From IMG/VR virus record IMGVR_UViG_3300044645_002359, positions 124,001 to 188,000 of that record: 64,000 bases of DNA; one strand, written 5' to 3'. Below the pieces are notes generated by a model. That model saw only the letters and a list, made by a program, of their open reading frames with translations. It did not search any database and was not told the DNA's origin. Each line of letters begins with the position of its first letter. The first letter of the stretch is position 1. Positions 4,348 to 61,857 of this stretch are shown here, piece by piece. Both the position numbers and the translations under genes were made by a program.

Positions 4348-4418
4348 TCGGGTAAAGTTCCTTAGAAGTGACGCATTAATGAGTACCGAAAACAAAACAA
4401 GTATGGAAAGAGGGAACT

Positions 4419-5960
4419 TTGTCAAACAGATTTAAAACGGCTCCTGTGCCGACTGGGGAGATCTCAAGTTATACGAGCGACCCTTATAATTTATCCAGTA
4501 TTTACATGTTCGGGAGTTCTTCTCCCTTTACAGGATCTGGAAATAGCATAGTTCGGCCTAGCGACGACCTTTTAATCCAAAAGGGTGGAAATCGAGCACT
4601 TTCGGTTTACCAGAGACTCTTCTTTGACGAGCACGTACAAAGTTCTTTTTCTAAGCTGGTTCAAGAAGTTGTATCAAGACCCTGGTATGTTGAAGAGTAT
4701 AGCTCAAAACCGGGTGACATTGCAGTAAGAGACTTCGTAGCAGAGATTCTAGAAGAGCTGGCCTTGGATGAAATTTACAAAGGTTTGGCAGAAGCTCTGA
4801 TTGTAGGGTACAGTGTTGGAGAAGTAATGTGGAAAAAGACCAAGAGGGGGGTTATACCTTTCGACATTAGAATGAGAGACCAGCGCCGCTTCGTTTTCCA
4901 AGAATCGGAGGATTCTCAAAATGGCTTCACGATGCGCTGCTTAACCTTCAACCGGATGTTTGAGGGTGTCGAATTGCCCGCCAGAAAATTTGTGGTAAAT
5001 AGATACTGGTCTCAGCACAATGGTGACCCTTACGGTTCTTCTCTAGGCAGGGTGCTTTACCCGTTGGTTAAGTTTAGACGACGCGCTATAGAATCCTATG
5101 TCCTTTACGGTGACCGTTACGCCACTCCTACCGTTGTTGCTACGGCACCCTTAAGCGCATCTTCCGCAGAAATTGATACAATCTACAACCACATCTCTAA
5201 CTTATCACAAGAAACAGCTCTTGTTTTACCAGAGGGGTACAAGTTAGACTTTATAAATCCGAGCGGAAGCCCGGACGTTTTTAAAAGCTTGATTGACTAC
5301 ATTGATAAGGAAATCAGTTTGATACTTTGCGGAGAAAATGAAGCCGGACAAGCCGAGGCAGGTTCAAGAGCTTCTTCCCAAGTTGCCAATGTTGTAAGAG
5401 TAGTGAAAGCGGCCGAGATTTCTGAAGCTGTCTCCCATACTTTGACAAGAACCTTGGTAAGGTGGATCGTAGACCTTAACTTCGGAATCGACGTTGCGGC
5501 TCCAAGTCTCACAAGAGAGTTCAGAATTGAAGAATCTCCCGTCACAGCTAGTGACCTCTCAGTTCTCATACAATCGGGCTTCAAACCCCGAAGAGAGTGG
5601 GTGGAAAGGCACTTCAGAATTGAGCTTGAGTCTGAAGCTCCAAACTTTGAAACTAAAGGGGAAGAAGACAACACTACTTACAATCCCGACGAAGACACTG
5701 ATCTTTACAATTCAATTTTCGGTGGGGATTACGAATCAGAAGAGTCCGAGTCTACTGGTTCAACCACTAAACAAACTTCTGAGGAACCGCTACCGGAAGC
5801 CGAACCAGAAGAAACTTCCGGGGAATTAGTAGCAGAGGAAGCTCCTGAGGGTTACGATTCAATTTTTGAAGGGGGAGACGAATCAGAAGAGTCTTCCGCA
5901 GATCAACTTGTGGAAGAATTTATTAAGACCAAAACAAGGAAGAAAAGCAAAAAAGGGTAA
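4419..5960 (+). CDS. Portal protein (Mu gp29/DUF935-like) with acidic C-terminal tail
   Basis: ALIVGYSVGEVMW, DPYGSSL, YIDKEISLILCGE, LVRWIVDLNFG motifs; position upstream of protease gene. Confidence 0.88.
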   Translation: MSNRFKTAPVPTGEISSYTSDPYNLSSIYMFGSSSPFTGSGNSIVRPSDDLLIQKGGNRALSVYQRLFFDEHVQSSFSKLVQEVVSRPWYVEEYSSKPGDIAVRDFVAEILEELALDEIYKGLAEALIVGYSVGEVMWKKTKRGVIPFDIRMRDQRRFVFQESEDSQNGFTMRCLTFNRMFEGVELPARKFVVNRYWSQHNGDPYGSSLGRVLYPLVKFRRRAIESYVLYGDRYATPTVVATAPLSASSAEIDTIYNHISNLSQETALVLPEGYKLDFINPSGSPDVFKSLIDYIDKEISLILCGENEAGQAEAGSRASSQVANVVRVVKAAEISEAVSHTLTRTLVRWIVDLNFGIDVAAPSLTREFRIEESPVTASDLSVLIQSGFKPRREWVERHFRIELESEAPNFETKGEEDNTTYNPDEDTDLYNSIFGGDYESEESESTGSTTKQTSEEPLPEAEPEETSGELVAEEAPEGYDSIFEGGDESEESSADQLVEEFIKTKTRKKSKKG

Positions 5961-5969
5961 AAAACGTAT

Positions 5970-8546
5970 ATGAGTACAACAAGTAGTAAAGTGTTTACAA
6001 AACGTGTTCATGTTTTCACGGCGGGGCCTCAGATTTCCGCTCAGGGGGTAGAAAGAGATTTCACCCCCGATGACCTTCAACAAGTTGTTGAATCTTACGA
6101 TCCTCAAACTCATGAGGCTCCCTTAGTAATAGGGCACTCTGGAGACAATGACAGCGTACCTTCTTTCGGGTGGGTTAAAAAATTGGTTCGGAGCGGAGAG
6201 AAATTATACGCCGATGTCGATTTTACAGACACTGCTAAAGATTTGGTGAAGGACGGTCATTATCGCAAAGTTTCGATCTCTTTCTATTCCCCGAACTCCC
6301 CAATCAACCCACATGAAGGGAAGTGGAGTGTTAGACACTTAGCGCTTCTAGGTGCCTCTCCCCCCGCTGTTAAGGGTTTAGAACCTTTTTCATTCTCCGA
6401 AGACAAGGACGGAGTTTTCAACTTCGCTTCCGTTCTTTCACCCAGCGAGATCTTCGATGAAGAACTCGGCCCAACCCTTCTTGTTGAGCGAAGCCCTTTA
6501 GAAATTCTGAAGGAAAAGCTCGAAGAAGTTCGGGGGGACATGAAGTCTTCTTTGAATGATCTTCAAGAAAACCAGGAGCAACAAACAGAAACAGACGTCG
6601 ATGAGACGCGAAACAACACCTCGGCGGATGAAAGCACCGCCCCCGAAAACCCTAACCAGCAATTTTCCGAAATGAAAAAGAAAATGGGGCGTGAAGGAGC
6701 CGAAGTCTCCGAGTCCGCTCAAAAACTCGCAAACATGGAAGATCAGTTTCCAGAAGAAAAATTTGATGAAGGTGTTTCCCGTAAAGTTACAAAGGGAGCA
6801 CATGGCCAAGAAGTCCAAGTTGTGGAAGAAGTCTTTGAAGAAGACGACGAACTTTCCGACGAACATGGTGAACTTCCGGCTGCCTTCAAGAAAAACATGG
6901 CTAAAATGAAAGCCAAGGCTAAGCATAAGGCCCATGAAAATATGGATGATGAGGAAGAGGATGTTTCCGAAGACCACCGAGAACTCCCTGCTGCTTTAAG
7001 AGCAAATGCATCCAAAATGAAGGCTAAAGCTAAGCATAAGGCCCATGATGAAGACATGGACGAAGATGAAGAAGAAGGCGATTTCGCTGAAGTCAGTGAC
7101 AAAACTGCTTCTGGTGGTAAAGCCAGTTTCGGTAAGCACGCTCAGAAAGACTCTGAAGACCCTGCGGGAAGAGCAAAGACCGCTCGCTCCTCTGACGACA
7201 GCTACGGCGACCGTCAGTCGGTTGGTCACGGCGATGAAGAAGATCGTGAAGGCGTCACTTCTGATGACGAGCAAGACCTTGACAGAGTGAACACTGCTAA
7301 GAACGGTGATCAGGATGAAGATCGCAAGAAACTTGCCAAAGTTGCTGAAGGTGAAGGTGACGAAGACTCTCGTTGGGCAGACCAACCAGAAGGTCGCCGC
7401 CGTGCGATGGAAGACGATCAGTACAACGACGGCGAATACGGTCTTCCTCGCCCCAACAAGCCCGGAATTTCTGACGGTACTGACCCACACGGTCGTGACG
7501 GTGGTCCTACTCCCGTTTCTGAAAAGTCTGAGGAAGAACCCGATTCCGAAGATATCGTAGTTCCTCTTCAAAGCACCAAAGGAAACAAGGTTTCCCGTGT
7601 ACTTCATCAAACCTCCGGACAAAAAAGAGCTCCTTTGAAAGGTGGAGAGATCGCAGACCACAGCGAAGAATCTGATGGTGTTACCCGAACTGCTAAAAAG
7701 GCAGGTGTTTCCGCAGGCAATGACCCCCACGGTCGTGATGATGGCCCAACGAACTTCCCATCTCGTTCTGAAGAAGAGCCCGATGATCTGGAAATGGCTG
7801 TGGATCTGGAGAATGCTACTCAGAGCAATAAAGTTCGTATACTTCGTCAAAAGTCCGGAGACCAGCCTTCTCTTGACCACGCCGAAGACGACGACCTTGA
7901 TGTAGAAGAGTGCGAAGCTACTGGCAAAATGACACGCAAGTACGCTGAGCGTGACACTATGACCCGCACAGGAAAGGGTTCTACCTACGGGCAAAAGCGT
8001 TCGTTTATGGACGAGGAGGATGCTGAAGACGAGGATGACGATTATTCAGAAACCGATGACTTCTGCGGAATGGGCTCAATGGGGCAGGCCAAACCCATGG
8101 GTTACCCTGTTCAAATGTTCGAAGAGTTCCAGCGTGAACTAGAGAACCTTAAGAACGAAAATTCTCGTCTCAAGAAAGAGTACCAAGAGCAACAAACTCG
8201 CTCACGCAAACAACGCATCGCCGAGTTCGTAGATAACCTCTACACCGAAGGAAAGTTGACTGATGGGATTATTCCTCAGAGAGATCTTCAAAATTACTGC
8301 GAAGGTCTTGAGTTCGGGACCCTTGAGTTCGCTGAAGGCGAATCTCCAACAACCAAGTTGTTTGGACTTCTTGATCGCTTACCTAACCTGGTCTACTTCG
8401 GAGAAGTTGTCGCTGATGGTCGCTTCGAAGCTCCCGAAGATGAGGACCTTGACCCCCACGCCCGTGCCATGAAAATGGTTGAGTCCGGAGAGTGTGATTA
8501 CGTTGAAGCCATTAAGCGTTGCATTCCTTGGGGTGGAAGAGGCTGA
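5970..8546 (+). CDS. Mu gpI-like prohead protease fused to a long acidic scaffold region
   Basis: HEAPLVIGH, FGWVKKL, YRKVSISFY, RHLALLGASPPAVKGL protease motifs; C-terminal coiled coil; internal repeats. Confidence 0.88.
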   Translation: MSTTSSKVFTKRVHVFTAGPQISAQGVERDFTPDDLQQVVESYDPQTHEAPLVIGHSGDNDSVPSFGWVKKLVRSGEKLYADVDFTDTAKDLVKDGHYRKVSISFYSPNSPINPHEGKWSVRHLALLGASPPAVKGLEPFSFSEDKDGVFNFASVLSPSEIFDEELGPTLLVERSPLEILKEKLEEVRGDMKSSLNDLQENQEQQTETDVDETRNNTSADESTAPENPNQQFSEMKKKMGREGAEVSESAQKLANMEDQFPEEKFDEGVSRKVTKGAHGQEVQVVEEVFEEDDELSDEHGELPAAFKKNMAKMKAKAKHKAHENMDDEEEDVSEDHRELPAALRANASKMKAKAKHKAHDEDMDEDEEEGDFAEVSDKTASGGKASFGKHAQKDSEDPAGRAKTARSSDDSYGDRQSVGHGDEEDREGVTSDDEQDLDRVNTAKNGDQDEDRKKLAKVAEGEGDEDSRWADQPEGRRRAMEDDQYNDGEYGLPRPNKPGISDGTDPHGRDGGPTPVSEKSEEEPDSEDIVVPLQSTKGNKVSRVLHQTSGQKRAPLKGGEIADHSEESDGVTRTAKKAGVSAGNDPHGRDDGPTNFPSRSEEEPDDLEMAVDLENATQSNKVRILRQKSGDQPSLDHAEDDDLDVEECEATGKMTRKYAERDTMTRTGKGSTYGQKRSFMDEEDAEDEDDDYSETDDFCGMGSMGQAKPMGYPVQMFEEFQRELENLKNENSRLKKEYQEQQTRSRKQRIAEFVDNLYTEGKLTDGIIPQRDLQNYCEGLEFGTLEFAEGESPTTKLFGLLDRLPNLVYFGEVVADGRFEAPEDEDLDPHARAMKMVESGECDYVEAIKRCIPWGGRG

Positions 8547-9277: not shown

Positions 9278-9375
9278 CGTTTGCATGGCAAACGAGGGTA
9301 AAACAATTATAACAAACTAGGTGAAAAACAAGTCCTAGAGCAAACCACAAATGTAGACCTTTATCACATAAAAAC

Positions 9376-9849
9376 ATGTCTTTGAACATTGCACCCGTTT
9401 ACGGCAAACAGTTTATCCGTTATGCCGAGACTTGGGAAGCTGCTACCGACAACCAAGCTGGTGATGTCGGCGTAGTCGAAATTCCTGAGTTTGCTGTCGT
9501 TGCTTATGCAACTTATGCCGGCGCTAACAAAGTTTGCACCCCTGGTAACCTTACTTCCTTTACCGGGCCAATCGCTGGTGTCAACCAGTCCTATATCCCC
9601 ACCGCGCTTGCTCAACCTCATACTGCCCGCCAAGCTTCCGTAGCTACCAGTGGTTCTTTGATCGTTGAAGTTAGCGCTGACGCTGTTGCCGCTTTCACCC
9701 TGAATGGCCGCCTCTCTGTTGGTCCCAATGGTAAGGCACTCCCCACCGCTAACGGTGGCGTGAATGTTACCCTCGACGGCACCACTCCGCTTATCCGTGA
9801 AGTTGTTGAAATCGGTGGTCGCACCATCGTAATTGCTTCCTTCGCTTGA
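9376..9849 (+). CDS. Capsid decoration/cement protein
   Basis: 157 aa, Ala/Gly/Val-rich, between scaffold and MCP; ASVATSGSLIVEV...GRLSVGPNGKA pattern. Confidence 0.6.
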   Translation: MSLNIAPVYGKQFIRYAETWEAATDNQAGDVGVVEIPEFAVVAYATYAGANKVCTPGNLTSFTGPIAGVNQSYIPTALAQPHTARQASVATSGSLIVEVSADAVAAFTLNGRLSVGPNGKALPTANGGVNVTLDGTTPLIREVVEIGGRTIVIASFA

Positions 9850-9976: not shown

Positions 9977-10795
9977 ATGGGTTACCGAAAGAACCTTTTT
10001 ATGGGGGCCTACATGAGACTTATGCGTAAGGGCAGAGGTAGAGGATTACTTACTAAAGGGGAGCAGGGGGTAATGCACAAACACCACATATTTCCTAAGT
10101 CTATTTTCAAGAACAAAAGGACCGTAAACAAGAAGATCGTAGGGTTAACTCCCAAGGAACACTTCCAGGCCCACCACCTGCTCTACCGTGCTTTTATCGA
10201 TAGGTATGGAACTAACCACTGTAGAACAATAAAAATGGGTCATGCCATATCTAAAATGGCCACCAAGCACGGGAAACAAGGGGTTAGGAACATATTATCG
10301 TTAAAACAGTTTGAAGAAGCGGTGAATATGCAAAGGGTCTCCATGAGAGCCCGTTACTCTGACGAAAAGGAACGGGAGAAAACTTCCTTGAAGGCTAAAG
10401 AAAGAATGGCTAGAGAAGGAGAACGGGAGAAGATATCTGAATCTCTGAAAGAATACTTTAAAGACCCTAAGCAAAGGGAGAAGCAAAAATATAACACTCT
10501 GGGAAAAAAGTGGTATAATAACGGTGAGACCCAAACCTTGTCTTGGTGTTGTCCCGGAGAGGAATGGGTGAAAGGAAGACTATCGAATGGTATAACTGGA
10601 ACATATTGGTGTAACAATGGATTTGAAAACTTAAAAGTGAGGAAAGGTAACGAACCCCCTCAGGGATTTTCATCGGGTAGACTTATGAATCTTGGGAAGT
10701 TCTACAATGACGGTAAGAAACAAATAAGAGTTGCAGAAGGTTGTAAGGTTCCCTTAGGCTTCTCTCCTGGGCGACTCAAGAGAAATAGGGTATAA
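9977..10795 (+). CDS. Free-standing HNH homing endonuclease
   Basis: HKHHIFPKS...LTPKEHFQAHHLL HNH module; three C-terminal KWYNNG/YWCNNG/KFYNDG repeats. Confidence 0.8.
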   Translation: MGYRKNLFMGAYMRLMRKGRGRGLLTKGEQGVMHKHHIFPKSIFKNKRTVNKKIVGLTPKEHFQAHHLLYRAFIDRYGTNHCRTIKMGHAISKMATKHGKQGVRNILSLKQFEEAVNMQRVSMRARYSDEKEREKTSLKAKERMAREGEREKISESLKEYFKDPKQREKQKYNTLGKKWYNNGETQTLSWCCPGEEWVKGRLSNGITGTYWCNNGFENLKVRKGNEPPQGFSSGRLMNLGKFYNDGKKQIRVAEGCKVPLGFSPGRLKRNRV

Positions 10796-10878
10796 CTCTA
10801 TTGGTTGCGACATCACGCTCACAACCAGATTGCTAAGGCAATCTTTGAAGTCAACTTTACACAAAGGAAACATCTATT

Positions 10879-13800
10879 ATGATGAATCTTCAACAGACCT
10901 ACGCCGGGGTCGATCCTATCTTGACCACGTTGGCGCAGGGCTTCATGCTCCCTTTGGTGTAGGGGAAAAGAAATTGGGTGAACTGCGGGAAAGCCTACTT
11001 TTGTTCAACGAAAGGGTCAATCCGCAGCCAAGCTTCCGGTACACCGGGAGAAGGTTCAGAGACTACCTGAGAGATATAGTTCTCTTAATAACAGGCTAGA
11101 GCGCCCAACGTTTTGTAAAGAAACGATAAGATAGTCCGACACTCTGTGTAAACAGAGAGAACATACTGTCCACCAACATCGCGAATCGATAAGGTTCCCT
11201 TCAGAGGCAACTCTGATTGAAAATCGGGTGAATTGCTGGGATACCTGACGGTTTCAGAATCTACTTTTCTGGAACACAAGGCAATCAGCAGCCAAGTTTA
11301 CTTTGGGCATCTATTGGCTACAATAGAGATAAGTAAGAAGGTTCAACGACTAGAAAGTGATCAACCCAGAAATAATCTTTCCACGAGCGCCCGACTCTCC
11401 CTTACATTACCAACGGTATGTAAAGCTTATAAACTCCCGCCCCTCTAGAGGTTTGATAAAAGAGATTGGTTTCCACATCCACCACATAGTGCCTAAGTGC
11501 ATGAAGGGTGGGAACGCTAAAGCCAATTTAGTTAAACTCACCTACAGAGAGCATTATCTATCCCATTGCTTGTTAGCTTTAGCTTTCAGTTCCGTGAAGA
11601 AACTGGGTAAAGCTATAAACTCTTTCAAAAAGTCTTCAAAGAACTCTCGGGTTTACGAAAAGGTGGCTCACCATGAGCACTCCGAAGAAACTAAAGTCAA
11701 AATTAGCAAATCCAACAAAGGAAAAGCTAGACCCCGTAAAGTTCCAATGTCTGACGAAGAGAGAACTGCTCGCGCAGAACGATGTAAAAATAGGGTTTGG
11801 AGTGAAGAGTCAAAACAAAAACTTAGAGACAAAGCCTTAAGTAATCCTACTATCCAGTTTGCAATACAAGCAGCTAATAGCCCAGATAGAGATCGAACGG
11901 GAGTTAATAACCCCCGAGCAGATAAAGAAGTTTGGGCCAACTTAGGGGTCTTGCATAGAGCCTGGACAGAAAACGGAAAGTGTGGTGCCAGAAAGCTCCA
12001 CAGGCTAACAAAATTAGGTAATACTTGGCAATCTCTAAAAACCGTTGTTAAAAAGTTTAAGGAAGATGATGATATAGTCTGAACTTACAGGAAACTGTAA
12101 GAAGTGAGTGATAAACTCTCTCACGGTAACAAGTGTTTATCGCACCTGTTGTTGACACCCCTACCAGAGCTGGGAGAATTCTCAGATTTGGTAAGGAACA
12201 ATTTGCTATAAACGACTTCCGTCGTGCTTATGGTACAAACATTCCCTACGTTCAGAGCCGTTACGACTCTGAGCCCTACGCTCTTGAACAAGAAGTTGTG
12301 GCTTGGGAATTGCCTGAAGAAGTCGAACTGGCTTCCGCCGCTTGAGAGAGCGGTTGAAAAACTGGGTGAATTGCCTGGAACCCTAACTGCGTCAGCGTCG
12401 CACAAGGGAATCAGCAGCCAAGTTTACTACGTCGAGAAATCACTATGATTCCTGTAGTAAAAAGGTTCAACGACTAGACGATGAGTTTCGACAACAATAA
12501 CTCGTCCACGAGTGCCCAGCACCCTAACAAATGGTTGAAATGGTACTACACTCTATGCGCCTCCCGAAAACACAGGGGCGTATCCAAGGAAAAGGGTTAC
12601 CACGTACATCACATTATTCCAGAATGTGACGGTGGTGACAACTCCAAAGAAAACAGAGTGAAATTAACAAACCGAGAACACTTTATCGCTCATGTCCTCC
12701 TTGCAAAAGGAACTAACTCAGTCAAACACTGGTACACAGTTAGAAGGATGTTGGGAGTGAAAGGTGGGAAAGGCGCAGTTACCTACCAACCTCGTCTATC
12801 TATTCTATCTACTTCTCTTCAAAAGACTGCTTTTGAAATTGCCCCTGGAGCTGCGCAAAAGGGAAAACCAAAGTCGGAACAAATGCGTTCAAGACTAAGT
12901 CGGACCAAGAAAGGCAAACCTCTACCTCCTGAAACCGTACGAAAAGCACACGAAGCTGTTCGAGGCAGAGTTCAAACAGAAGAGGAAAAGCAAAGGCGAA
13001 GTGAGTCTGCAAAGGCTTACTGGGCCGAGAAAAGAATGAAAGACAAGGGTGAAGATATAGTCTGACCTCCTCTAAAGAGAGAGAAGTGAGGGATAAAGAG
13101 CCCCCACGATAACACAAGTGCATCGAGAACGCTGGTGAAGGCCCTGCACAAGTAGACCTCCGCGCTTTCGAAACCCGTAACGCAATGTCCAGACTGATGA
13201 ACTCATACGAGTACACAGTTTCTCAGGCCGTTACCGTTACCGGTTCCTACAACCCATATGAACCCTGGGATACAACCCCCGGTTCACAAACTGGCCTTGG
13301 TTTTACAACCTGGACCAACTTCAACACCGCTTATGGCACCGCAACCGGCCCCGCCGCATGGTCCGCTCTCTCTGCTAACCCCATTGAGGACATTCTGACC
13401 CTGAAGCGTGCTGTTGCCAACCAGATCGGCATCCGTCCGAACTCCGCTGTTCTTGGAACCGCTGTTTTCGACCTCTTGCTGACCAACCAAGCGATCCTTG
13501 AGCGTATCAAGTATACCTCACCCGACAGCATCGATACAGATGTCATCGCTCGCTACTTCGGTCTTGAGCGTGGCCTGCGCGTAGCCGAAGGTCGTTATTT
13601 GGCCGCAGACGGTACCTTGCAACCGGTATTCCCAAGCAACGGTATCCTTCTGTTCTACAGCCCCAACGGCCCCTCTGATTCAATCATGCCTGCCGGTGGC
13701 GCTAATGCTGCGACTCCTGCGTTTAGCTACACATACCAGTTGACTGGCACACCCGCTGTCCGTCCTGAGTACTACATTCGCGAACGCCGCGTTGTACGTG

Positions 13801-14366: not shown

Positions 14367-14376
14367 GTCACAAGTG

Positions 14377-14404
14377 AAAGCCCCCTAACCGGGGCTTTTT
14401 TTTT
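14377..14404 (+). terminator. Intrinsic terminator after tail tube
   Basis: AAAGCCCC-CTAACC-GGGGCTTT followed by a T run. Confidence 0.8.
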
Positions 14405-14454
14405 CGGATACCATAAGAGGGTAAAACCTTTGTAAGAATAGACCTTTTGTATAG

Positions 14455-21876: not shown

Positions 21877-21907
21877 GCGGGTAAAATTCTTTAGCTAAGA
21901 AACTAAA

Positions 21908-22210
21908 ATGACAACGAGAAAGAAAAAAGTGTTTTCCGACATTGAGAGTCTAGAACAAGGCTTAACAGAAGAGATTCTTGAAGAAAGTTTTTCATTACCC
22001 TCCTTAGAAGATTTCTCGGAGACCCCTGTAGAAAAGGAAGAGGAGCCAGAACCTATTGAAAAGGTGAAGGAAGTAACCGAAGAAGTGAAAGCTGAGGTTA
22101 TTGAACAAGAACCCGAAGGGCAACCTGTTCAAGTGAGACCGAGACCGGCTGCTCCAGCTAAACGGATCCCTTCCAAAAACACTCCGAAACTTTCTGCTAA
22201 ACTTAGGTAA
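21908..22210 (+). CDS. Small acidic hypothetical protein
   Basis: 100 aa Glu/Pro-rich ORF after a GGGTAAA motif. Confidence 0.6.
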   Translation: MTTRKKKVFSDIESLEQGLTEEILEESFSLPSLEDFSETPVEKEEEPEPIEKVKEVTEEVKAEVIEQEPEGQPVQVRPRPAAPAKRIPSKNTPKLSAKLR

Positions 22211-30441: not shown

Positions 30442-30464
30442 GACCCTCTAACGAGGGTCTTTTT
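30442..30464 (+). terminator. Intrinsic terminator
   Basis: GACCCTC-TAAC-GAGGGTC-TTTTT. Confidence 0.75.
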
Positions 30465-30502
30465 GCAGGGTAAAATAAGATCGTAGAGTTTCCCTTTCAC
30501 AA

Positions 30503-31344: not shown

Positions 31345-31367
31345 GAGGGGCTTCGGCCCCTCTTTTT
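31345..31367 (+). terminator. Intrinsic terminator (UUCG loop)
   Basis: GAGGGGC-TTCG-GCCCCTC-TTTTT. Confidence 0.85.
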
Positions 31368-31401
31368 GAAGGGTAAAGTCTAATACACCTTTTTTTTAAA
31401 C

Positions 31402-32154: not shown

Positions 32155-32179
32155 GGGGCTTCGGCCCCCCTTTTTTTTT
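32155..32179 (+). terminator. Intrinsic terminator (UUCG loop)
   Basis: GGGGC-TTCG-GCCCC-CC-T9. Confidence 0.8.
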
Positions 32180-32221
32180 CTCTCAGGGTAAAATACTACA
32201 TAACGTGTCTTATGTTTAAAA

Positions 32222-34555: not shown

Positions 34556-34596
34556 GTCTTTCTAAGGGTAAAGTTACTCAGTCTACAAACTATACA

Positions 34597-35191: not shown

Positions 35192-35503
35192 ATGGCAACG
35201 TTCAATGAAAGAGCTTTTCTCATACGTGCATTAGCTGGAATTTTCGTAGTTCAATTTATTACGGTAGGTTACCAAACTTGGTCCTGCCAGTCTTCTGCCA
35301 CCCAGAATAAAGACTCAACTCAGGTCACTCTTATTTGCAACAATGCCACAAATTCTTTTAACGAGACCGGAAAACTTGCTCTAACAACGATTCTTGCTCT
35401 CCTGGTTCCTTCCTCGGGTCAAAACGTTTCTGAAATTCTTGATTCGGTGAGAGGAAACCGCAAACGTAAAGGTGAGGACGAAAATCAAGAGGGTAAAGTT
35501 TAG
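35192..35503 (+). CDS. Small membrane protein (two hydrophobic segments), possibly lysis-related
   Basis: FLIRALAGIFVVQFITVGY and LALTTILALLV; GAGG RBS before ATG 35192; charged C-terminus. Confidence 0.5.
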   Translation: MATFNERAFLIRALAGIFVVQFITVGYQTWSCQSSATQNKDSTQVTLICNNATNSFNETGKLALTTILALLVPSSGQNVSEILDSVRGNRKRKGEDENQEGKV

Positions 35504-36496: not shown

Positions 36497-36500
36497 GAAA

Positions 36501-36872: not shown

Positions 36873-37377
36873 GAGCTACGACTGGCACCGGCTGGAAGGT
36901 TTGGGTTTTGACCTGAACTACATTGAAAAGGCACTTCCTGCCTCATACAAAAAAGGTCTAACTGCACGAGAGCAAGGTGTCGCTAAGCGTGAAGCGAAAG
37001 ATACTATGGAGAAGGCCAGCAGCAAGAAAACCTCGGCGAAAGAATTGTATAAAGACTGGGAGTCGGATAAGAGTTTCCGGAATAGGGAAAAAGAGATACC
37101 GAAGTCCCCAGCCACAGAAGCATTTGAGCGCGACTTTGCTGAGTCTTCCCCTTCCGACACAGCCCTTAAGAACAAGTCAAAAAAGTCCGGCATCCCTATG
37201 CCTATACTGAGACAAGTGTTTAAGAGAGGAATGGCAGCTTGGAGGTCTGGTCACCGTCCTGGTGTTGCACCGCAGCAATGGGCTCAGGCAAGAGTGTCAA
37301 GTTTCATCACGGGAGTGGGAGGAGCACGGAAGGCTGATGCCGACCTTTGGAAAAAAGCTAAGGGTAAAAAACATTAG
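36865..37377 (+). CDS. Conserved viral protein (DUF5824-like C-terminal domain)
   Basis: LKNKSKKSGIPMPILRQVFKRGMAAWRSGHRPGVAPQQWAQARVSSF, recognised from algal viruses and cyanophages. Confidence 0.6.
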   Translation: MSESYDWHRLEGLGFDLNYIEKALPASYKKGLTAREQGVAKREAKDTMEKASSKKTSAKELYKDWESDKSFRNREKEIPKSPATEAFERDFAESSPSDTALKNKSKKSGIPMPILRQVFKRGMAAWRSGHRPGVAPQQWAQARVSSFITGVGGARKADADLWKKAKGKKH

Positions 37378-37393
37378 TTTAGAACTTAGAGAA

Positions 37394-37762: not shown

Positions 37763-37767
37763 TCAAA

Positions 37768-38127
37768 ATGTGGGGATCTTTCTTACAATCTGCTTATGAT
37801 TCTTTCCTGGAAGCGGCTATAGAAAAGTACGTTGAGAAAGTTGACAAAAATTCACTAGATTGCAATGACCCCCACGCCACTCCGAGTCACCCTACGAAAT
37901 CTCACATAGTTAAAGCGTGCTATCCTGGAGCCCCGAAAGGTGGCAAGCTGATTCGATTCGGTCAACAAGGTGTGAAAGGGTCGCCAAAGAAAGAAGGGGA
38001 ATCGGAGGCTTATAAAGCCAGACGAGAGGCTTTCAAGGCAAGACATGCTGCTAATATTGCGAAGGGTAAGTCTTCAGCTGCCTACTGGAGTAATCTGGAA
38101 GAATGGGCGGAAGACATTAAGTGGTAG
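37768..38127 (+). CDS. Conserved phage protein with G-S-F leader
   Basis: MWGSFLQSAYDSF; KSHIVKAC...KLIRFGQQG...RREAFKARH...SAAYWS domain seen in many aquatic phages. Confidence 0.6.
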   Translation: MWGSFLQSAYDSFLEAAIEKYVEKVDKNSLDCNDPHATPSHPTKSHIVKACYPGAPKGGKLIRFGQQGVKGSPKKEGESEAYKARREAFKARHAANIAKGKSSAAYWSNLEEWAEDIKW

Positions 38128-38159
38128 GGTATAATTCAGGTTGTAATCAACCTTAAACA

Positions 38160-38858: not shown

Positions 38859-38891
38859 GAGGGTAAAGTTCACTGACAGCAATCTCTAAAC

Positions 38892-41550: not shown

Positions 41551-41602
41551 GTCGGGGTAAAGATTAGGGTGCCCTTGCACACAGTCTTAAGCTCTTTAGC
41601 AA

Positions 41603-46372: not shown

Positions 46373-46413
46373 TTAAAGGGTAAAGTTCACTATATACGTT
46401 AGTTCTGAAAACA

Positions 46414-50416: not shown

Positions 50417-50513
50417 GCCCCTCTTTCTAATTATACTTAAGGCGTTATCGAAGGCCATTAAACTGGGGCGGGTATAACTCACTATAAGGACTGAAAACGA
50501 ACTCTAAGTCACC

Positions 50514-53500: not shown

Positions 53501-55055
53501 AGCAACGACTTCCGCTCGTGGAACCATGAGTGCAGCCGATAAGTTGAAACTTAACAGCATTGCCGATGGGGCAACTGCAAACCAGACTGATGCGTTTTTG
53601 CTGAGTCGTACCAATCATACTGGGACGCAGACGGCGTCAACTATTACCGGGCTAGCTGCAGTGGCCATCAGCGGCAGCGCCACTGACTTGGGCACCGGCA
53701 CGCTCCCGGCTGCCAGGCTTCCAGACACAACAGTAACCGTCGGCAGCTACGGCACAGCCTCTGCAGTGCCTCAGTTCACGGTTGACGCAGCGGGGCGGCT
53801 TACGGCAGCGGCATCCATCGACATTGCCATCGCCTCCACTGCGGTATCTGGCCTTGGCAGCCTAGCCACGCAGTCAGGCACATTTTCTGGCACTAGCAGC
53901 GGTACAAATACAGGCGATAATGCTGTAAATACCCTTTACTCTGGCCTGGTTTCTAATGCTAATCATAGCGGAGACGCTAGTGGCTCCACTGTTTTAACCC
54001 TTGCAACCGTCAACTCAAACGTCGGATCGTTTGGCTCTGCAACTGTTACCCCAATTTTCACCGTTAACGGTAAGGGGCTGATCACTGCTGCTAGCACTTC
54101 CACTATTACACCTGCCGTCGGCAGTATCACCGGCCTAGGAACCGGAATTGCACAAGCCCTAGCCGTCAACACTGGCGCTGAAGGAGCCCCGGTGATCCTA
54201 GGCGGAGCGGGAGGAATTCCTTCAAGCCTCACGCTCACCAACGCCACCGGGTTGCCGTTTGGAACAGGCATAAGTGATAAACCTACAACCCTATCAGGCT
54301 ACGGTATAACAGACGGCTTCACCGAAGCCAACGTCCGATCAACGACTCTCACAGGGTATACCAGTGGCGCCGGGACGATCACGGCTGCAGACACTGTGCT
54401 CACAGCAATCCAAAAGCTTAACGGTAATGCAGCGACGTTCGGTACTGGTAGCGTTACTAGCGTCGGTCTTAGCCTCCCAAATTTGTTCAACGTTACTACT
54501 ACGACGGTCACCACCAGCGGCACCCTGACGGCCAGTCTGAACACGCAGGACGCCAATCTTGTCTGGGCTGGTCCGACCAGCGGTAGTGCAGCGGCCCCGA
54601 CCTTCCGAACCCTGGTGGCGGCCGATTTGCCTTCGACCCCGCAATTCACGAACTTAGGTTTGGGAACCGCCGCTGTGAGCGGCTGGGAGTTGACCGTCGT
54701 AGGCGGAATGGTACAGAGGCGAGAATTGATAAGCCCAGTCAGTGGCGTTTATACGATCGATGTCACATCGGGCAATGAATTTTATCTTGACAACCCTATC
54801 AACGGGGCCACCACAATTAACCTGAGCAACCTAAGCAACATTCCAAATAGTTATCGCTGGACGGGTGTGTTAGAATTTACCTACACTAGCGGCGCGATCT
54901 CGTGGTTTACCGGCAATTCTGGGTGGACCGTGAGTTGGAAAACGCCTACAAAAACAGCAAAAGTTCCAACCTCTGGAAACGTTGAAGAATTCGTAATCCG
55001 TGTGATTGGTTCCTCATTTCGGATTGTTGTGGCACCAACTACGGAGACTAACTGA
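50514..55055 (+). CDS. Long tail fibre/tailspike (1513 aa)
   Basis: ILRSLEAKKRP N-terminus, KGQVQLSS fibre repeat, beta-helix region (SMVVDSFTQVN...YAQLVSFF), Gly/Thr-rich shaft. Confidence 0.8.
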   Translation: MPQTIQILRSLEAKKRPNPATLLPGQLAANIDPTEPGLYFSDTSGNLRKVGPCHIGSEPPNSDVVPPAFAGNCIGEMWYDTVGEVLKIWDGTIWVSTQSGGGGGTGDLGDLALTNTASNPFLIFTDSSGNPQKFNLNASLTQKGQVQLSSSLTDVSETLAATPRAISLLNTNIGTVSSGLTTANANIATLQQQLLKFRDGNRIYVSKSIYASDSNNGTSPGEPLLTLGAAAAAAQPGDLVEVGPGLYTEPSLPIRWKRDVGILGKGLRNARVQPAAGQEYNDIFKVDSGFWCWGLEFAGHQADSSTGQQAWAISFNETADNTSLGAVGLGAYIFKSPYIQNCTSLTAEDDNGNAGSQSTGDTGGGIIVDGASCAKNSPIRSMVVDSFTQVNLGGPGCLVKNDGYAQLVSFFGTFCNYHVRTESGGQVNLSGGGTSDFGTYGLMADGYSPSPLYTAKARVSAFGATRIEKGVTFDIPSNLITCTDLLGHGLSIDDQVIFNCSQGTFPDNIVTGTEYYVISSGFTTVDFKVSLTQGGSPVDISGTATGAYTVIRQGNTEVDVIDLGANRLGRQLKYPTAGSAGSPGNAVTITARGGSTAGSSFTVTLDTSTIRHEYIGGGTVTIGANSYPVSSCTYDNLTGSTVLAATGYAPTLGAQVTMQDLFFTCSSSSRPSSGILLFPQLPFPSGGATPFTYTKTGANTFTYLTTATPSGPEHEYVSGGTAVIGSTNYGVADCSYVKNTGLVTITTVTPLPGASSGTVTVEGLNFICPTSGYIVTGSVPIDINGNPVAFGAPTQAGYRINFYSGVNGGLKNTIDADQVIDFRNRSQVSAPSHTFEYVGSGTNYDALPYNGGVPVPANKIVETNNGRVFSSNTDELGNFAVGTQFYVDGTNGSVTINTDQFNLSGLNFIGPFSRNGGISTVGEQLREISNNTSLIASTGVADGNTAPTQFAVKEYTGSRYVTNVATELGGPLSVTGNAGASGEGIWSYVKTLSIAAATTSARGTMSAADKLKLNSIADGATANQTDAFLLSRTNHTGTQTASTITGLAAVAISGSATDLGTGTLPAARLPDTTVTVGSYGTASAVPQFTVDAAGRLTAAASIDIAIASTAVSGLGSLATQSGTFSGTSSGTNTGDNAVNTLYSGLVSNANHSGDASGSTVLTLATVNSNVGSFGSATVTPIFTVNGKGLITAASTSTITPAVGSITGLGTGIAQALAVNTGAEGAPVILGGAGGIPSSLTLTNATGLPFGTGISDKPTTLSGYGITDGFTEANVRSTTLTGYTSGAGTITAADTVLTAIQKLNGNAATFGTGSVTSVGLSLPNLFNVTTTTVTTSGTLTASLNTQDANLVWAGPTSGSAAAPTFRTLVAADLPSTPQFTNLGLGTAAVSGWELTVVGGMVQRRELISPVSGVYTIDVTSGNEFYLDNPINGATTINLSNLSNIPNSYRWTGVLEFTYTSGAISWFTGNSGWTVSWKTPTKTAKVPTSGNVEEFVIRVIGSSFRIVVAPTTETN

Positions 55056-57337: not shown

Positions 57338-58096
57338 TTAAAAGTCTAGAGCTAGATCTTCTGGACCCTGCTTTGAGAAAGAACCAAAAAGTTCAGAAGG
57401 TGTTTCATAACCTTCGCTCCCTTTTGACCTATTAGCTGAAGCACAGACGAGGGAAAATCTGGCTTTAGCCTCGTGATACAACTTCCAATCTTTCCACAGA
57501 ATCTCATCTTTGAATTTCTTGGCAGTAGGTGGCCCAGTTAGAGAAACATCCGTATAGGTTAAAGAATTTAACTTTATAAAAGAATCGGCAATTTCCGCGA
57601 AAGAAAGCCCTACATGGTCAACGTCGGTTCTCATGCCTCTTCGAATGCTCTTTCCTGTCAAGTAACAAGTTATTGGAAGGTTCAAAGACTCTCTAAAGTC
57701 CTTCAACTGAGATGAAACTCCATTCCTCATGGCAGCTTTCACGGCATTGTAATGCTTTTCTTCTAAACTCGCGCTTGTTGCTATCTTCTTAGCGGGGTAC
57801 AAAAAGTCTATCAACTTAGCCTTTGGGACGGGTTGCTTCGAGCCCCCTCGCTCAAGGCTTATCATTTTAACTTTTCTACCCCCTGCAATTTCTACATTCC
57901 TCAAGTAAACATTAACGTCTAGGTCGTTCGACAGTTTCGCCCACGTTGGAGAAAGACGGCAAGATCTCAGAACGAAGTCTCTGGGCTCACCGACCAACCT
58001 TGAATTTGCTCGATGGTTTTCAATTATTCTACTTAGTTTTTCCGTGTAGTCCTTCTTAGTTAGCCCAAGGGTGTCTTTTCCTATCGTGTTGCTCAT
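57338..58096 (-). CDS. Putative HNH-fold nuclease
   Basis: CYLTGK...DVDHVG...SLVCASANRSK; the only convincing minus-strand gene, preceded by a minus-strand GGGTAAA. Confidence 0.55.
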   Translation of the reverse strand: MSNTIGKDTLGLTKKDYTEKLSRIIENHRANSRLVGEPRDFVLRSCRLSPTWAKLSNDLDVNVYLRNVEIAGGRKVKMISLERGGSKQPVPKAKLIDFLYPAKKIATSASLEEKHYNAVKAAMRNGVSSQLKDFRESLNLPITCYLTGKSIRRGMRTDVDHVGLSFAEIADSFIKLNSLTYTDVSLTGPPTAKKFKDEILWKDWKLYHEAKARFSLVCASANRSKGSEGYETPSELFGSFSKQGPEDLALDF

Positions 58097-58171
58097 TTCA
58101 GTGGGTTGAATCTAATAAACTTTACCCGACTACAAGGAAGCTAGGATAAGGTCAACGGTAATTGACTCAAT

Positions 58172-59711: not shown

Positions 59712-59712
59712 G

Positions 59713-60788: not shown

Positions 60789-60839
60789 TTTACGAAAGAC
60801 GGTAACTCCAATAATAAAAGGGTTACCGTTACAACCCTC

Positions 60840-61823
60840 ATGAGTGAAAGTCAACCCGCCCGCCCCAAACTCGAGTCTTACTTCAAACTTGACAGTGATC
60901 CTGCTCCTTTGGTGGTAGTTGACTTTCACGTATACTTACACGATGTGAAAAAGTGGTTCGAAGAAAAAGTTGAGGGGTCCGTCAGTAAAGAAGTAGAAGA
61001 CAAATTGATAAAAGGATGTTGGGCCTTGAAGATAAATCGAGGGCCGGATATGCTGCCTAGGCACGATTACCGTATTGTTGTTGTTGCAGATAGCAGATTT
61101 TCGGATACAGGTAATTACTGGCGCGACACTTTCATGAAACGATCTGCAGACGTGCAGTCGGCTTGGTTAGCTTTTGCGGAAAAAGAGGGGAAAGATCTAT
61201 CGGAAATCCCAACCCATTACAAGGGCACTCGTGGAGAGAAAACCGAGACGTTTTGGCGCATATTCAACATAGGTTGGGACTACGTCAACAAATACTATCC
61301 GGTTTTTTCTCAAGAAGGGTTTGAAGCGGACGATGTAGCAGGGGCTATATATCGCCTGTCTCGCAATAGCCCCCCAGGTTCTGTGGTACGAGAGAGGCAG
61401 ATTTTGCTTTCAACTTTAGACCGAGATTGGTCTCAATTGGTTGATGAAGACATGAATGTTTATTTCGCAAACACCCGTGTTCCCTTCCCTAACGAAAAGA
61501 TTCAGGAAAGATTAGTAGGCAATATAGGGGTTATTGAACATACGAAACATAGGATGGGTTACGACCTTGACCACCCGAAGAATTTGGCCGACTGGAAAGT
61601 TAAACATGGTGATTCATCTGACAATTTGCCACCAGGCTCTCCAAAATGTCTTTTCGACCTATGCGAACCCCATACAGAATACACTATAGAAAGAACTGCT
61701 TCCTGGTACCCTCAGCTTGAGGAGTGTTTGAATGACCCCTCTGCCAATATAAAAACTTTTCACTTTGATCAGGCTTACAAAGAATTCGCTAAAATTAGTA
61801 TTGACATACCGGTGAGGTTGTAA
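60840..61823 (+). CDS. 5'-3' exonuclease / flap endonuclease (T4 RNase H, T5 D15-like)
   Basis: VVVDF, VVADS, YKGTR, EGFEADDV, STLDRDWSQL, GDSSDNLP. Confidence 0.88.
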   Translation: MSESQPARPKLESYFKLDSDPAPLVVVDFHVYLHDVKKWFEEKVEGSVSKEVEDKLIKGCWALKINRGPDMLPRHDYRIVVVADSRFSDTGNYWRDTFMKRSADVQSAWLAFAEKEGKDLSEIPTHYKGTRGEKTETFWRIFNIGWDYVNKYYPVFSQEGFEADDVAGAIYRLSRNSPPGSVVRERQILLSTLDRDWSQLVDEDMNVYFANTRVPFPNEKIQERLVGNIGVIEHTKHRMGYDLDHPKNLADWKVKHGDSSDNLPPGSPKCLFDLCEPHTEYTIERTASWYPQLEECLNDPSANIKTFHFDQAYKEFAKISIDIPVRL

Positions 61824-61857
61824 AGCGGGTAAAACTAGGTAGAATGAATATGTACGG

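What the first reader, a model, noticed from the sequence alone, without database searches (positions are those of the whole stretch)
4350..61833. SigF/SigB-type GGGTAAA motif as the late promoter
Seen: about 20 GGGTA(A/T)A sites upstream of structural and late-cluster genes. The single minus-strand gene (start 58096) has the motif on the minus strand (TTTACCC 58121-58127). I saw none before the DnaQ/ThyX/exonuclease block, and no consistent -35 element. Some upstream proteins end in KG*, GKV*, KGKKH* or RV* because the motif overlaps their ends. Established: Bacillus SigB uses GGGWAW and Synechocystis SigF uses a GGTAA -12 element. Inference: late transcription uses a phage-encoded SigF-like sigma factor or the host SigF, not a T4-type TATAAATA promoter.
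Basis: partly seen in the sequence, partly recalled or inferred. Interest (0 to 1): 0.68.

Follow-up and report, generated by a model that had tools for sequence, protein, structure and literature searches.

The report
GGGTAAA late promoter of a cyanophage
A short DNA word, GGGTAAA(A/G), sits just upstream of about 19 structural genes of a large freshwater cyanophage and its relatives, and is most likely a late-gene promoter with no -35 box that is read by a sigma factor the phage itself encodes.

Summary
GGGTAWA occurs 31 times in the window against 14.4 expected, and 26 hits are on the + strand. Nineteen sites lie in or at the edge of the 3.5% of sequence that is intergenic. Most end 22-29 nt before a start codon, and four directly follow strong terminators.

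No -35 element exists, and the T4 word TATAAATA is absent. The window is part of a 201-kb contig of a roughly 280-kb freshwater relative of Synechococcus phage S-CBWM1. S-CBWM1 has no alignable DNA with the window but uses the same word in the same geometry, often before the same genes. About 1.45 Mb of related contigs show it 477 times on the coding strand against 51 on the other strand.

The lineage encodes two sigma factors. One lies on this contig outside the window and has an early, host-type promoter. The other lies about 4.5 kb past the contig end in a relative that is 92-95% identical. It resembles SigB/F/G and FliA most closely, and no region 4 could be detected in it.

Synechocystis SigF reads GGGTAAG at -12. 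I rate it a new variant of a known kind, of moderate interest.

The parts
4350..4357 (+). GGGTAAAG, 62 nt before the TTG start of the portal gene (4419-5960)
   Evidence: The motif is conserved before the portal gene in about 55 of 78 relatives and in S-CBWM1.
5955..5962 (+). GGGTAAAA overlapping the portal stop (..KKG*). It lies 8 nt before ATG 5970 and 29 nt before the in-frame GTG 5991 of the prohead protease.
   Evidence: S-CBWM1 has the motif 28 nt before its protease start.
9296..9303 (+). GGGTAAAA, 73 nt before gene 9376-9849 (homologue of S-CBWM1 gp172)
10788..10795 (+). GGGTATAA overlapping the stop of the HNH gene (..NRV*), 84 nt before ATG 10879 of major capsid protein exon 1
   Evidence: The S-CBWM1 capsid gene has the motif 63 nt upstream.
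14372..14409 (+). Intrinsic terminator (GC hairpin plus T9) ending about 10 nt before the next motif
   Evidence: hairpin -15.8 kcal/mol, T-run
14419..14426 (+). GGGTAAAA, 29 nt before gene 14455-14931, which is followed by baseplate J-like 14944-17766
21879..21886 (+). GGGTAAAA, 22 nt before gene 21908-22210
30442..30464 (+). Intrinsic terminator directly upstream of the PhoH promoter site
30468..30475 (+). GGGTAAAA, 28 nt before phoH (30503-31327)
31345..31367 (+). Intrinsic terminator (GAGGGGC-TTCG-GCCCCTC plus T5), 4 nt before the motif
31371..31378 (+). GGGTAAAG, 24 nt before gene 31402-31632 (gp165-like N-terminus MQGSFSE)
32155..32179 (+). Intrinsic terminator (GGGGC-TTCG-GCCCC plus T-run) before the motif
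32186..32193 (+). GGGTAAAA, 29 nt before virion structural protein gene 32222-33847
34566..34573 (+). GGGTAAAG, 24 nt before gene 34597-35184
35491..35498 (+). GGGTAAAG overlapping the end of 35129-35503 (..EGKV*), 24 nt before gene 35522-36496
37362..37369 (+). GGGTAAAA overlapping the end of 36865-37377 (..KGKKH*), 25 nt before ATG 37394
38127..38134 (+). GGGTATAA, 26 nt before gene 38160-38858
38861..38868 (+). GGGTAAAG, 24 nt before gene 38892-39515
41555..41562 (+). GGGTAAAG, 41 nt before the 1589-aa baseplate wedge-like gene 41603-46372
46378..46385 (+). GGGTAAAG, 29 nt before the 1216-aa gene 46414-50064 (BNR-repeat protein homologue)
50470..50477 (+). GGGTATAA, 37 nt before the 1513-aa gene 50514-55055
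58120..58127 (-). GGGTAAAG on the minus strand, 24 nt before the ATG (58096) of the only minus-strand gene, 57338-58096
61827..61834 (+). GGGTAAAA, 24 nt before gene 61858-62529 (homologue of S-CBWM1 gp2, which also carries the motif)

Best explanation
GGGTAAA(A/G) is the core of the promoters that drive the structural and late genes of this phage. The phage is a freshwater relative of S-CBWM1 with a genome of about 280 kb.

The element works alone, with no -35 box, like an extended -10. The TAAA(A/G) part would be melted by sigma region 2, and the GGG just upstream would be read as double-stranded DNA by regions 2.4 and 3.0. Transcription should then start about 8-10 nt after the motif, giving short leaders of 14-21 nt with mostly no Shine-Dalgarno sequence.

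The phage has no RNA polymerase of its own, so the host core enzyme is redirected by a phage-encoded sigma factor of the group-3-like kind. The likeliest reader is 'sigma-2', the homologue of S-CBWM1 gp045. It has regions 2 and 3 but no detectable region 4. Its gene lies about 4.5 kb beyond the end of this contig in a relative that is 92-95% identical.

Shown: the motif, its placement, its conservation across the lineage, the absence of a -35 box, and the presence of the sigma genes. Inferred: promoter function, the start-site position, and which sigma reads the motif.
For: Enrichment and placement:
- The motif is enriched and strand-biased. Intergenic enrichment has P = 2e-15.
- Among all 7-mers in the -60..-1 regions of ORFs, it ranks second by enrichment ratio and first by count in this contig (23 against 2.5 expected). 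It is among the top three in S-CBWM1 (23 against 1.7).
- The distance to the start codon peaks at 22-29 nt but ranges from 22 to 84 nt. SD-like sequences sit next to the more distant starts, so this is not a translation signal.
- Four sites sit 4-12 nt after the strongest intrinsic terminators of the region. The downstream genes therefore need new initiation.
- Sigma-70-type promoter matches in the late region are at chance level: 18 against 19.2 +/- 4.1.

Conservation:
- S-CBWM1 shares 58% amino-acid identity in the large terminase and no megablast DNA match. It has 48 + strand against 8 - strand hits with the same geometry.
- Of 53 reciprocal-best orthologue pairs, 10 carry the motif in both genomes (odds ratio 5, P = 0.013).
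- The motif stands as an island of conservation before the portal gene in about 55 of 78 relatives.
- In 1.45 Mb of relatives' loci it occurs 477 times on the coding strand against 51 on the other, and the eighth base is A in 83%.

Who could read it:
- No multisubunit RNA polymerase domains were found in the contig, and no RNA polymerase is annotated in the complete S-CBWM1 genome.
- Sigma-1 lies at G000 199336-199953.
- Sigma-2 follows the RNR genes in all 18 relatives whose fetched locus reaches that far. One of them is L093, which aligns to the contig end at 92-95% identity and runs 5.6 kb further.
- Sigma-2's best matches are SigB/F/G (3.6e-11), cyanobacterial SigF (4.8e-11) and FliA. In the PDB they are FliA, S. 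aureus SigB and SigF.
- Sigma-2 has Pfam region 2 above cut-off and a weak region 3. The region 4 models do not match its C-terminus.
- Synechocystis SigF promoters have GGTAA or GGGTAAG at -12.
- S-TIM5 has only a sigma-2-type sigma (hhalign 95.5%). Its structural genes carry a single 8-mer, GTTTAAAG, 24-30 nt before the start codons.

Other promoter classes:
- Separate host-type promoter classes serve the early genes, the tRNAs and the replication genes.
Against: - No start site is mapped. The one RNA run holds only four short assembled contigs.
- Canonical SigB and SigF promoters have a -35/-32 element, and this one has none.
- Both phage sigmas are far below the family cut-offs, so calling them 'SigF-like' rests on weak similarity.
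- The sigma-2 gene is not on this contig.
- In S-CBWM1 the RNR-sigma-2 operon is itself preceded by GGGTAAAG. That fits reading by sigma-1, or autoregulation.
- The more distant S-CBS2 has a sigma annotated as SigF but uses an unrelated upstream word.
- The absence of region 4 in sigma-2 rests on HMMs and a model of medium confidence (pLDDT 67.5).
- Some motif copies precede non-late genes.
Confidence: 0.6

Rival explanations
1. The motif is a late or middle promoter, but it is read by phage sigma-1 (the gp055 homologue on this contig, G000 199336-199953). Sigma-1 is made early from a host-type promoter. Sigma-2 would then serve another, unidentified promoter class.
For: - The sigma-1 gene has a host sigma-70-type promoter with an upstream hairpin, both here and in S-CBWM1, so it is available first.
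- In S-CBWM1 the RNR-sigma-2 operon has GGGTAAAG 61 nt upstream, as expected if sigma-1 switches on sigma-2.
- Sigma-1 also gives weak SigF/G and SigB/F/G matches.
Against: - Sigma-1 has a region 4 match: S-CBWM1 gp055 matches Sigma70_r4 and the full-length TIGR02937 model. It would therefore be expected to use a -35 box. The AGTTTAC-N17-TAnnnT class fits that better.
- S-TIM5 has 8-mer-only late promoters and no sigma-1 homologue.
Confidence: 0.17
2. The motif is a promoter read by the host's own group 3 sigma factor, SigF. The phage sigmas do something else.
For: - GGGTAAG/GGTAA at -12 is the core of Synechocystis SigF promoters, and the -12 region matters most for activity.
- SigF is widespread in cyanobacteria, including Synechococcus elongatus (paper list).
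Against: - SigF promoters also need the -32 TAGGC and an AG-rich stretch from -39 to -7. Neither is conserved here.
- The lineage keeps two sigma genes of its own in every relative examined.
- Some picocyanobacteria have only group 1/2 sigmas (PMC11119718). A phage that depended on host SigF would be restricted in such hosts.
- The host of this phage is unknown.
Confidence: 0.12
3. The motif is not a promoter. It acts at the RNA level, as an RNase processing site, a 5'-leader stability element or a translation enhancer within long polycistronic transcripts.
For: - The spacing to the start codon is fairly fixed at many sites (22-29 nt).
- The leaders lack Shine-Dalgarno sequences.
- No start-site data exist.
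Against: - Four sites lie just downstream of strong terminators, so little read-through RNA would carry them.
- The distance to the start codon varies from 22 to 84 nt here and from 35 to 62 nt before the portal genes of relatives, with SD-like sequences at the distant starts.
- The late region has no other candidate promoter.
- The sequence matches a known -10/-12 class.
Confidence: 0.08
4. The motif is a chance or compositional artefact, for example a by-product of stop codons and codon usage at gene ends.
For: The motif contains TAA and overlaps several stop codons.
Against: - No shuffle of 100 reaches the observed count.
- Thirteen copies are wholly intergenic.
- The motif is conserved across non-alignable genomes.
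- Control words show no strand bias of that size.
Confidence: 0.01

Closest known systems
Synechocystis sp. PCC 6803 SigF (group 3) promoters, e.g. pilA1 (Asayama & Imamura 2008, PMC2532724)
   Same: The core GGTAA, or GGGTAAG, at -12 is almost identical to GGGTAAA(A/G). The -12 region is the most important part. The host clade is cyanobacterial.
   Different: SigF promoters also need the -32 TAGGC and an AG-rich stretch from -39 to -7. No upstream element is conserved here. The likely reader is a divergent phage sigma, not the cellular SigF.
Bacillus subtilis SigB (GTTTAA-N12-14-GGGWAW) and actinobacterial SigF/SigB promoters (GGGTAT -10)
   Same: They share a -10 element of the form GGGTA(T/A). 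The phage sigma-2's best PDB and fold matches include S. aureus and B. subtilis SigB and SigF. The consensus as quoted in PMC2532724 is given.
   Different: These promoters have a conserved -35 box, and the phage element has none. The phage motif ends in AAA(A/G) rather than AT.
T4-type late promoters (TATAAATA, read by gp55 with gp33 and the sliding clamp), including T4-like cyanophages
   Same: A single 8-bp -10-like element with no -35 box lies a few tens of nt upstream of late genes. The sigma appears to lack a working region 4. (T4 facts are from my own knowledge and the review PMC2988020 listed.)
   Different: The sequence is different, and TATAAATA is not used. The sigma is a recognisable sigma-70 family protein with regions 2 and 3, not gp55. 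The lineage has a gamma-like family A DNA polymerase rather than a T4 replisome (PMC7156551). No clamp coupling is known.
Phage sigma cascades such as Bacillus phage SPO1 (gp28, then gp33/34)
   Same: Host-sigma early promoters drive a phage sigma gene. Two phage sigmas coexist with several promoter classes in one genome. SPO1 facts are from my own knowledge.
   Different: The assignment of sigmas to classes is untested here, and the promoter sequences are unrelated.
Cyanophage S-TIM5 structural-gene upstream word GTTTAAAG
   Same: An 8-mer lies 24-30 nt before start codons, and it shares the 3' half TAAAG. The sole sigma of S-TIM5 is related to sigma-2.
   Different: Positions 2-3 are TT instead of GG. 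Only a 41-kb piece of S-TIM5 was examined.

Membership tests
SigB/SigF-type (group 3 sigma) promoter | -10/-12 element GGGTA(T/A) or GGTAA | tested here: met
   All 19 positioned sites are GGGTA(A/T)A. The literature cores are GGTAA/GGGTAAG and GGGTAT.
SigB/SigF-type (group 3 sigma) promoter | Conserved -35/-32 element (GTTTAA, GGTTT or TAGGC) at fixed spacing | tested here: not met
   No column from -50 to -2 exceeds 0.26 bit in 38 sites of the contig or 33 sites of S-CBWM1.
SigB/SigF-type (group 3 sigma) promoter | Transcription starts about 7-12 nt downstream and depends on a group 3 sigma | not testable with these tools
   Only assembled contigs of one metatranscriptome were available, and they give no 5' ends.
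T4-type late promoter | Consensus TATAAATA | tested here: not met
   One hit against 1.5 expected, antisense and inside a gene.
T4-type late promoter | Single -10-like element with no -35 box | tested here: met
T4-type late promoter | Read by gp55 with gp33 and the sliding clamp | not tested
   No gp55 profile was run. The complete S-CBWM1 annotation lists two sigma-70-family sigmas and no gp55, gp33 or gp45.
SigB/SigF/SigG sigma family (NCBIfam TIGR02980; cyanobacterial SigF NF005644), tested on sigma-2 | Score above the curated cut-off | tested here: not met
   43.2 and 42.8 bits against cut-offs of 234 and 261. S-CBWM1 gp045 scores 53.4 and 46.6. These are the best matches, but sigma-2 is not a member.
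SigB/SigF/SigG sigma family, tested on sigma-2 | r2-r3-r4 domain architecture (PMC11119718) | tested here: inconclusive
   r2 scores 29.5 bits, above cut-off. r3 scores 15.9 bits, which is weak. The r4 models match only the region 3 helix-turn-helix, not the C-terminus. The AF2 model shows three helices at residues 190-235 with no clear helix-turn-helix, at mean pLDDT 67.5.
Sigma-70 family, tested on sigma-1 and sigma-2 | Sigma-70 region 2 domain | tested here: met
   Sigma-2 scores 29.5 bits on PF04542 (cut-off 24). Sigma-1 of this contig scores 21.6 bits, just under, but is 46.5% identical to S-CBWM1 gp055, which scores 37.9 bits and 55.6 bits on TIGR02937 (cut-off 42.9). All three are in phrog_351, RNA polymerase sigma factor.

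The most novel reading that the evidence does not exclude
A widespread lineage of cyanomyoviruses runs a three-tier programme with two phage sigmas. The lineage includes S-CBWM1, the roughly 280-kb freshwater phages and, more distantly, S-TIM5.

The proposed tiers are:
1. Host SigA reads leaderless early promoters and the sigma-1 gene.
2. Sigma-1, which has regions r2 and r4, reads the AGTTTAC-N17-TAnnnT middle promoters. These include the one before the RNR-sigma-2 operon.
3. Sigma-2 descends from group 3 sigmas and has lost a working region 4. It reads -10-only late promoters whose GGG (TT in S-TIM5) acts as an extended -10.

This would be an independent, SigF-derived counterpart of T4 gp55.
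Probability: 0.25. Interest if true: 0.7.

Novelty: new variant of a known kind. Interest (0 to 1): 0.5.

Why it matters
Transcription signals are known for T4-like and T7-like cyanophages but not for the S-CBWM1/S-TIM5 lineages. Those lineages are abundant in lakes and estuaries: 129 related portal loci were confirmed in IMG/VR, and there are holders in 14 studies.

A defined 8-mer late promoter, together with two host-type classes, gives three things:
- An operon map and a temporal map for hundreds of uncultured genomes.
- A testable pairing of promoters with phage sigma factors.
- A possible second example, unrelated to T4 gp55, of late transcription from -10-only promoters by a sigma with no detectable region 4.

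S-CBWM1 and its host are in culture, so the model can be tested directly.

Tried and rejected
- Megablast of 12 kb against isolate phages found nothing. A protein search was needed to find relatives.
- The genome search with Pfam Sigma70_r2 and r4 on the contig found nothing. That was a false negative: tblastn with the S-CBWM1 sigma found sigma-1.
- TSS mapping was not possible. The only RNA run is kept as assembled contigs. Four short pieces (35124-37891) show that a related strain is present in a metatranscriptome, but they give no 5' ends.
- I tested whether distant SigF-like phage sigmas go with the same motif. They do not: S-CBS2 uses GGCATCCTA-like words.
- GGGTATA is not enriched across relatives (63 against 45). 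The 'W' at position 6 is therefore supported only by three well-placed sites in this window.
- A scan of prokaryote genomes with the sigma-2 profile gave two MAG contigs labelled Opitutales and Microbacteriaceae. These are probably mis-binned phage DNA, so no cellular relative was found.
- The T7-like RNA polymerase search is uninformative because its control did not ring. Multisubunit RNA polymerase domains were not found.
- Literature searches for the motif as a phage promoter, and for the original S-CBWM1 paper, found nothing usable. I cannot rule out that the subscription paper mentions it.
- The large protein searches were not run.
Full report
**What the window is.**
The window is bases 124001-188000 of a 201,260-bp IMG/VR viral contig that CheckV estimates to be 71% complete. 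Its genes include the following:
- tail sheath, portal, prohead protease and major capsid protein
- baseplate and fibre-like giants
- two large-terminase paralogues
- PhoH, and a DnaQ/ThyX/exonuclease block

The closest isolate is Synechococcus phage S-CBWM1 (Aokuangvirus), with 58% amino-acid identity in the large terminase. The S-TIM5 group follows at 34%. There is no megablast DNA match to any isolate, but gene order follows S-CBWM1 closely. Related IMG/VR contigs reach 277 and 279 kb. Runs holding the sequence come from lake and freshwater metagenomes. A high-light-inducible-protein-like ORF (my reading of its sequence) lies near the contig end and in L093. The window therefore belongs to a large freshwater cyanomyovirus.

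**The observation.**
- GGGTAWA occurs 31 times against 14.4 +/- 3.4 expected, and no shuffle of 100 reaches 31. Twenty-six hits are on the + strand. GGGTAAAR occurs 24 times against 6.2.
- On a simple ORF map, 96.5% of the window is coding. Even so, 13 hits are wholly intergenic and in the sense orientation, where 0.44 would be expected (P = 2e-15).
- Five more hits overlap the last codons of the upstream gene, which explains the protein ends KKG*, NRV*, EGKV* and KGKKH*. One lies in a spurious antisense ORF. That makes 19 well-placed sites.
- The remaining 12 hits are internal or antisense, close to the chance level.
- The motif ends 22-29 nt before the start codon at 14 of the 19 sites. The others have leaders of 37-84 nt (portal, capsid, the gp172 homologue, and the 41603 and 50514 genes).
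- The one minus-strand gene has the motif on its own strand, 24 nt upstream.
- A further site lies 98 nt before the sheath gene, just outside the window at G000 123927. S-CBWM1 has one 91 nt before its sheath gene.

**An unbiased test.**
I counted every 7-mer in the -60..-1 regions of all ORFs. GGGTAAA ranks second by enrichment ratio and first by count in the contig (23 against 2.5 expected). It is among the top three in S-CBWM1 (23 against 1.7). Aligning the sites shows information only in the 8-mer GGGTAAA(A/G), with a weak A at -1 and a weak T two or three bases downstream. Nothing is conserved between -50 and -2 in either genome.

**Conservation.**
- S-CBWM1 has 48 hits on its coding strand against 8 on the other, and most are 23-32 nt before start codons.
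- Of 53 reciprocal-best gene pairs, 10 carry the motif in both genomes (odds ratio 5, P = 0.013). The true overlap is higher, because my ORF calls misplace the protease and capsid starts.
- Before the portal gene of 78 IMG/VR relatives (74-99% amino-acid identity), GGGTAAAA stands conserved in otherwise diverged spacers in about 55. Most of the rest have an extra ORF inserted upstream.
- Over 1.45 Mb of relatives' loci, some of them redundant, the word occurs 477 times on the coding strand against 51 on the other. Control words give 50-290 without such a bias. The eighth base is A in 83%.

**Why a promoter.**
- Four sites lie 4-12 nt after the strongest intrinsic terminators in the region: 14372-14409, 30442-30464, 31345-31367 and 32155-32179. 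The genes downstream therefore need new initiation.
- The distance to the start codon varies, and the distant starts have their own SD-like sequences. This argues against a translation signal.
- Sigma-70-type promoter matches in 28-47 kb are at chance level (18 against 19.2 +/- 4.1), and none sits before a structural gene.
- TATAAATA is absent.
- No multisubunit RNA polymerase domain is found in the contig. The complete S-CBWM1 annotation has none either. The host core enzyme must therefore be used.

**Other promoter classes (outside the finding).**
Two host-type classes serve the rest of the genome.
- *Class E.* About 20 copies of a long element lie between 2.6 and 111 kb, with one more before the sigma-1 gene. 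It consists of a GC hairpin, then CCCTTGTTTC, about 17 nt, (A)CGCTAT(G/A)(A/G)T, and an ATG only about 6 nt later. I read this as a -35/-10 promoter for leaderless mRNAs. The strict pattern gives 14 + strand hits and none on the - strand, against 0.25 expected.
- *Class M.* AGTTTAC-N16-18-TAnnnT gives 16 + strand hits and none on the - strand, against 1.25 expected. It lies before tRNAs, the DNA polymerase gene, the homing-endonuclease genes inside the capsid introns and, in L093, the RNR-sigma-2 operon. A spacing variant lies before the exonuclease gene.

GGGTAAA sites are sparse in the first 121 kb and dense from 122 to 201 kb. This spatial split supports a temporal reading. In S-CBWM1, however, the motif also precedes RNR, NMN adenylyltransferase, endolysin and some tRNAs.

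**The sigma factors.**
S-CBWM1 is annotated with two sigma factors.
- *Sigma-1.* The gp055 homologue is on this contig at G000 199336-199953, at 46.5% identity. It was missed by the quick Pfam look. It has region 2, and its orthologue has region 4. Its gene follows a class-E-like host promoter both here and in S-CBWM1, so it is probably an early gene.
- *Sigma-2.* The gp045 homologue is not on the contig. L093 aligns to the contig's last 10 kb at 92-95% identity up to the final base. It then continues through the RNR beta and alpha genes to a 243-aa sigma-2. All 18 relatives whose fetched locus reaches that far have it.
  - Its best NCBIfam matches are SigB/F/G (3.6e-11), cyanobacterial SigF (4.8e-11) and FliA (1.6e-10), all far below cut-off.
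  - Its best PDB sequence matches among sigmas are FliA, S. aureus SigB and SigF.
  - The top Foldseek hits of its AF2 model (pLDDT 67.5) are B. subtilis SigB and SigD models and SigA.
  - Pfam finds region 2 above cut-off and a weak region 3. The region 4 models match only the region 3 helix-turn-helix.
  - PHROG alignments of sigma-2 and of S-TIM5 gp108 stop earlier than that of sigma-1.

**Linking the motif to a sigma.**
- The mapped SigF promoters of Synechocystis have GGTAA at -12, and GGGTAAG in pilA1. The -12 region is the most sensitive part. They also need a -32 TAGGC and an AG-rich stretch (PMC2532724).
- The phage motif therefore matches the -10 half of group 3 promoters and lacks the other half. 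A sigma with no detectable region 4 would fit such a promoter, with GGG playing the part of an extended -10. This is inference.
- S-TIM5 gives an independent hint. Its only detectable sigma (gp108) is related to sigma-2 (hhalign 95.5%, E = 1.5e-8) and not to sigma-1. Its structural genes carry a single 8-mer, GTTTAAAG, 24-30 nt before their start codons: 9 copies in 41 kb against 2.4 expected, 7 of them so placed.
- Against sigma-2: in S-CBWM1 the RNR-sigma-2 operon is itself preceded by GGGTAAAG.
- The host SigF cannot be excluded. Some picocyanobacteria lack group 3 sigmas altogether (PMC11119718).

**What could not be done.**
No raw RNA reads exist for this phage. The single metatranscriptome run is stored as contigs and gives four short pieces with no end information. 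I found no paper describing the motif in phages. The original S-CBWM1 paper is not held.

**Verdict.**
It is not a canonical SigB/SigF promoter, and the reader of the motif is unproven. I rate it a new variant of a known kind, namely phage-sigma-dependent late promoters.

My probabilities:
- The motif is a promoter: about 0.9.
- It is read by a phage sigma: about 0.75.
- It is read by sigma-2 specifically: about 0.5-0.6.

Noticed in passing
G000 2.6-111 kb and 199.26-199.33 kb (outside the window); e.g. G000 13107-13145, 24141-24179, 79628-79666: About 20 copies of a long conserved element: a GC hairpin, then CCCTTGTTTC, about 17 nt, CGCTAT(G/A)(A/G)T, about 6 nt, then ATG. It reads as a host sigma-70-type promoter that produces leaderless early mRNAs. 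One copy precedes the phage sigma-1 gene. S-CBWM1 has an equivalent (GGGCGGTAAACCGCCC hairpin, then CTTTAC-N17-TAAAAT).
   Followed up: partly
window 9921, 11295, 12421 (and 1772, inside the sheath gene); G000 118496, 193471, 200841; L093:12213: A second host-like promoter class, AGTTTAC-N16-18-TAnnnT: 16 on the + strand, none on the - strand, 1.25 expected. It lies before tRNAs, the DNA polymerase gene, the homing-endonuclease ORFs and the RNR-sigma-2 operon of L093. It could instead be the target of phage sigma-1.
   Followed up: partly
window 10862-13083: The major capsid gene is split by three group I introns (Rfam RF00028 at 10862-11158, 11177-12101 and 12320-13083). Two of them carry homing-endonuclease ORFs (11357-12082 and 12481-13065). 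The exons match S-CBWM1 capsid residues 1-25, 32-94 and 92-341, and an 18-nt mini-exon is implied at about 11159-11176.
   Followed up: partly
window 26948-28711 and 28730-30127: Two adjacent large-terminase paralogues. The second is only about 29% identical to S-CBWM1 TerL, which has a single copy.
   Followed up: no
window 5970-8546: The prohead protease ORF is 858 aa, against 480 aa in S-CBWM1. Homology breaks between 6689 and 8193, so about 1.5 kb has been inserted, either an extra domain or an intein-like element.
   Followed up: no
L115 (S-TIM5, NC_019516.2 91672-133012): S-TIM5 structural genes are preceded by GTTTAAAG 24-30 nt before the ATG (9 copies against 2.4 expected). The phage's only detectable sigma (gp108, next to TerL) is related to sigma-2.
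   Followed up: partly
L113+L114 (S-CBS2): The siphovirus S-CBS2 has two sigma genes, one annotated SigF. Its enriched upstream words are GGCATCCTA and GCATACTA, not GGGTAAA.
   Followed up: no
G000 3.4-6.3 kb (L001, L002): A tRNA cluster of at least 14 genes lies near the contig start, and further tRNA-like sequences occur elsewhere in the contig. Some are preceded by GGGTAAA or AGTTTAC-type sites.
   Followed up: no
window 37338-37401 and 35476: A related strain (run X3) replaces 62 nt that include the motif site at 37362 with 728 other letters. It also has an 18-nt insertion 15 nt upstream of the motif at 35491. The spacers around the sites therefore change readily between strains.
   Followed up: no
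window 34914-34950: A short GAC/GAA (acidic) repeat inside gene 34597-35184 attracts very high contig depth from unrelated organisms. It is a low-complexity artefact in the read laying.
   Followed up: no
L116, L117 (MAG contigs labelled Opitutales and Microbacteriaceae): Sigma-2 homologues (49% identity) occur on contigs binned into non-cyanobacterial MAGs. These are probably phage contigs placed in the wrong bins.
   Followed up: no
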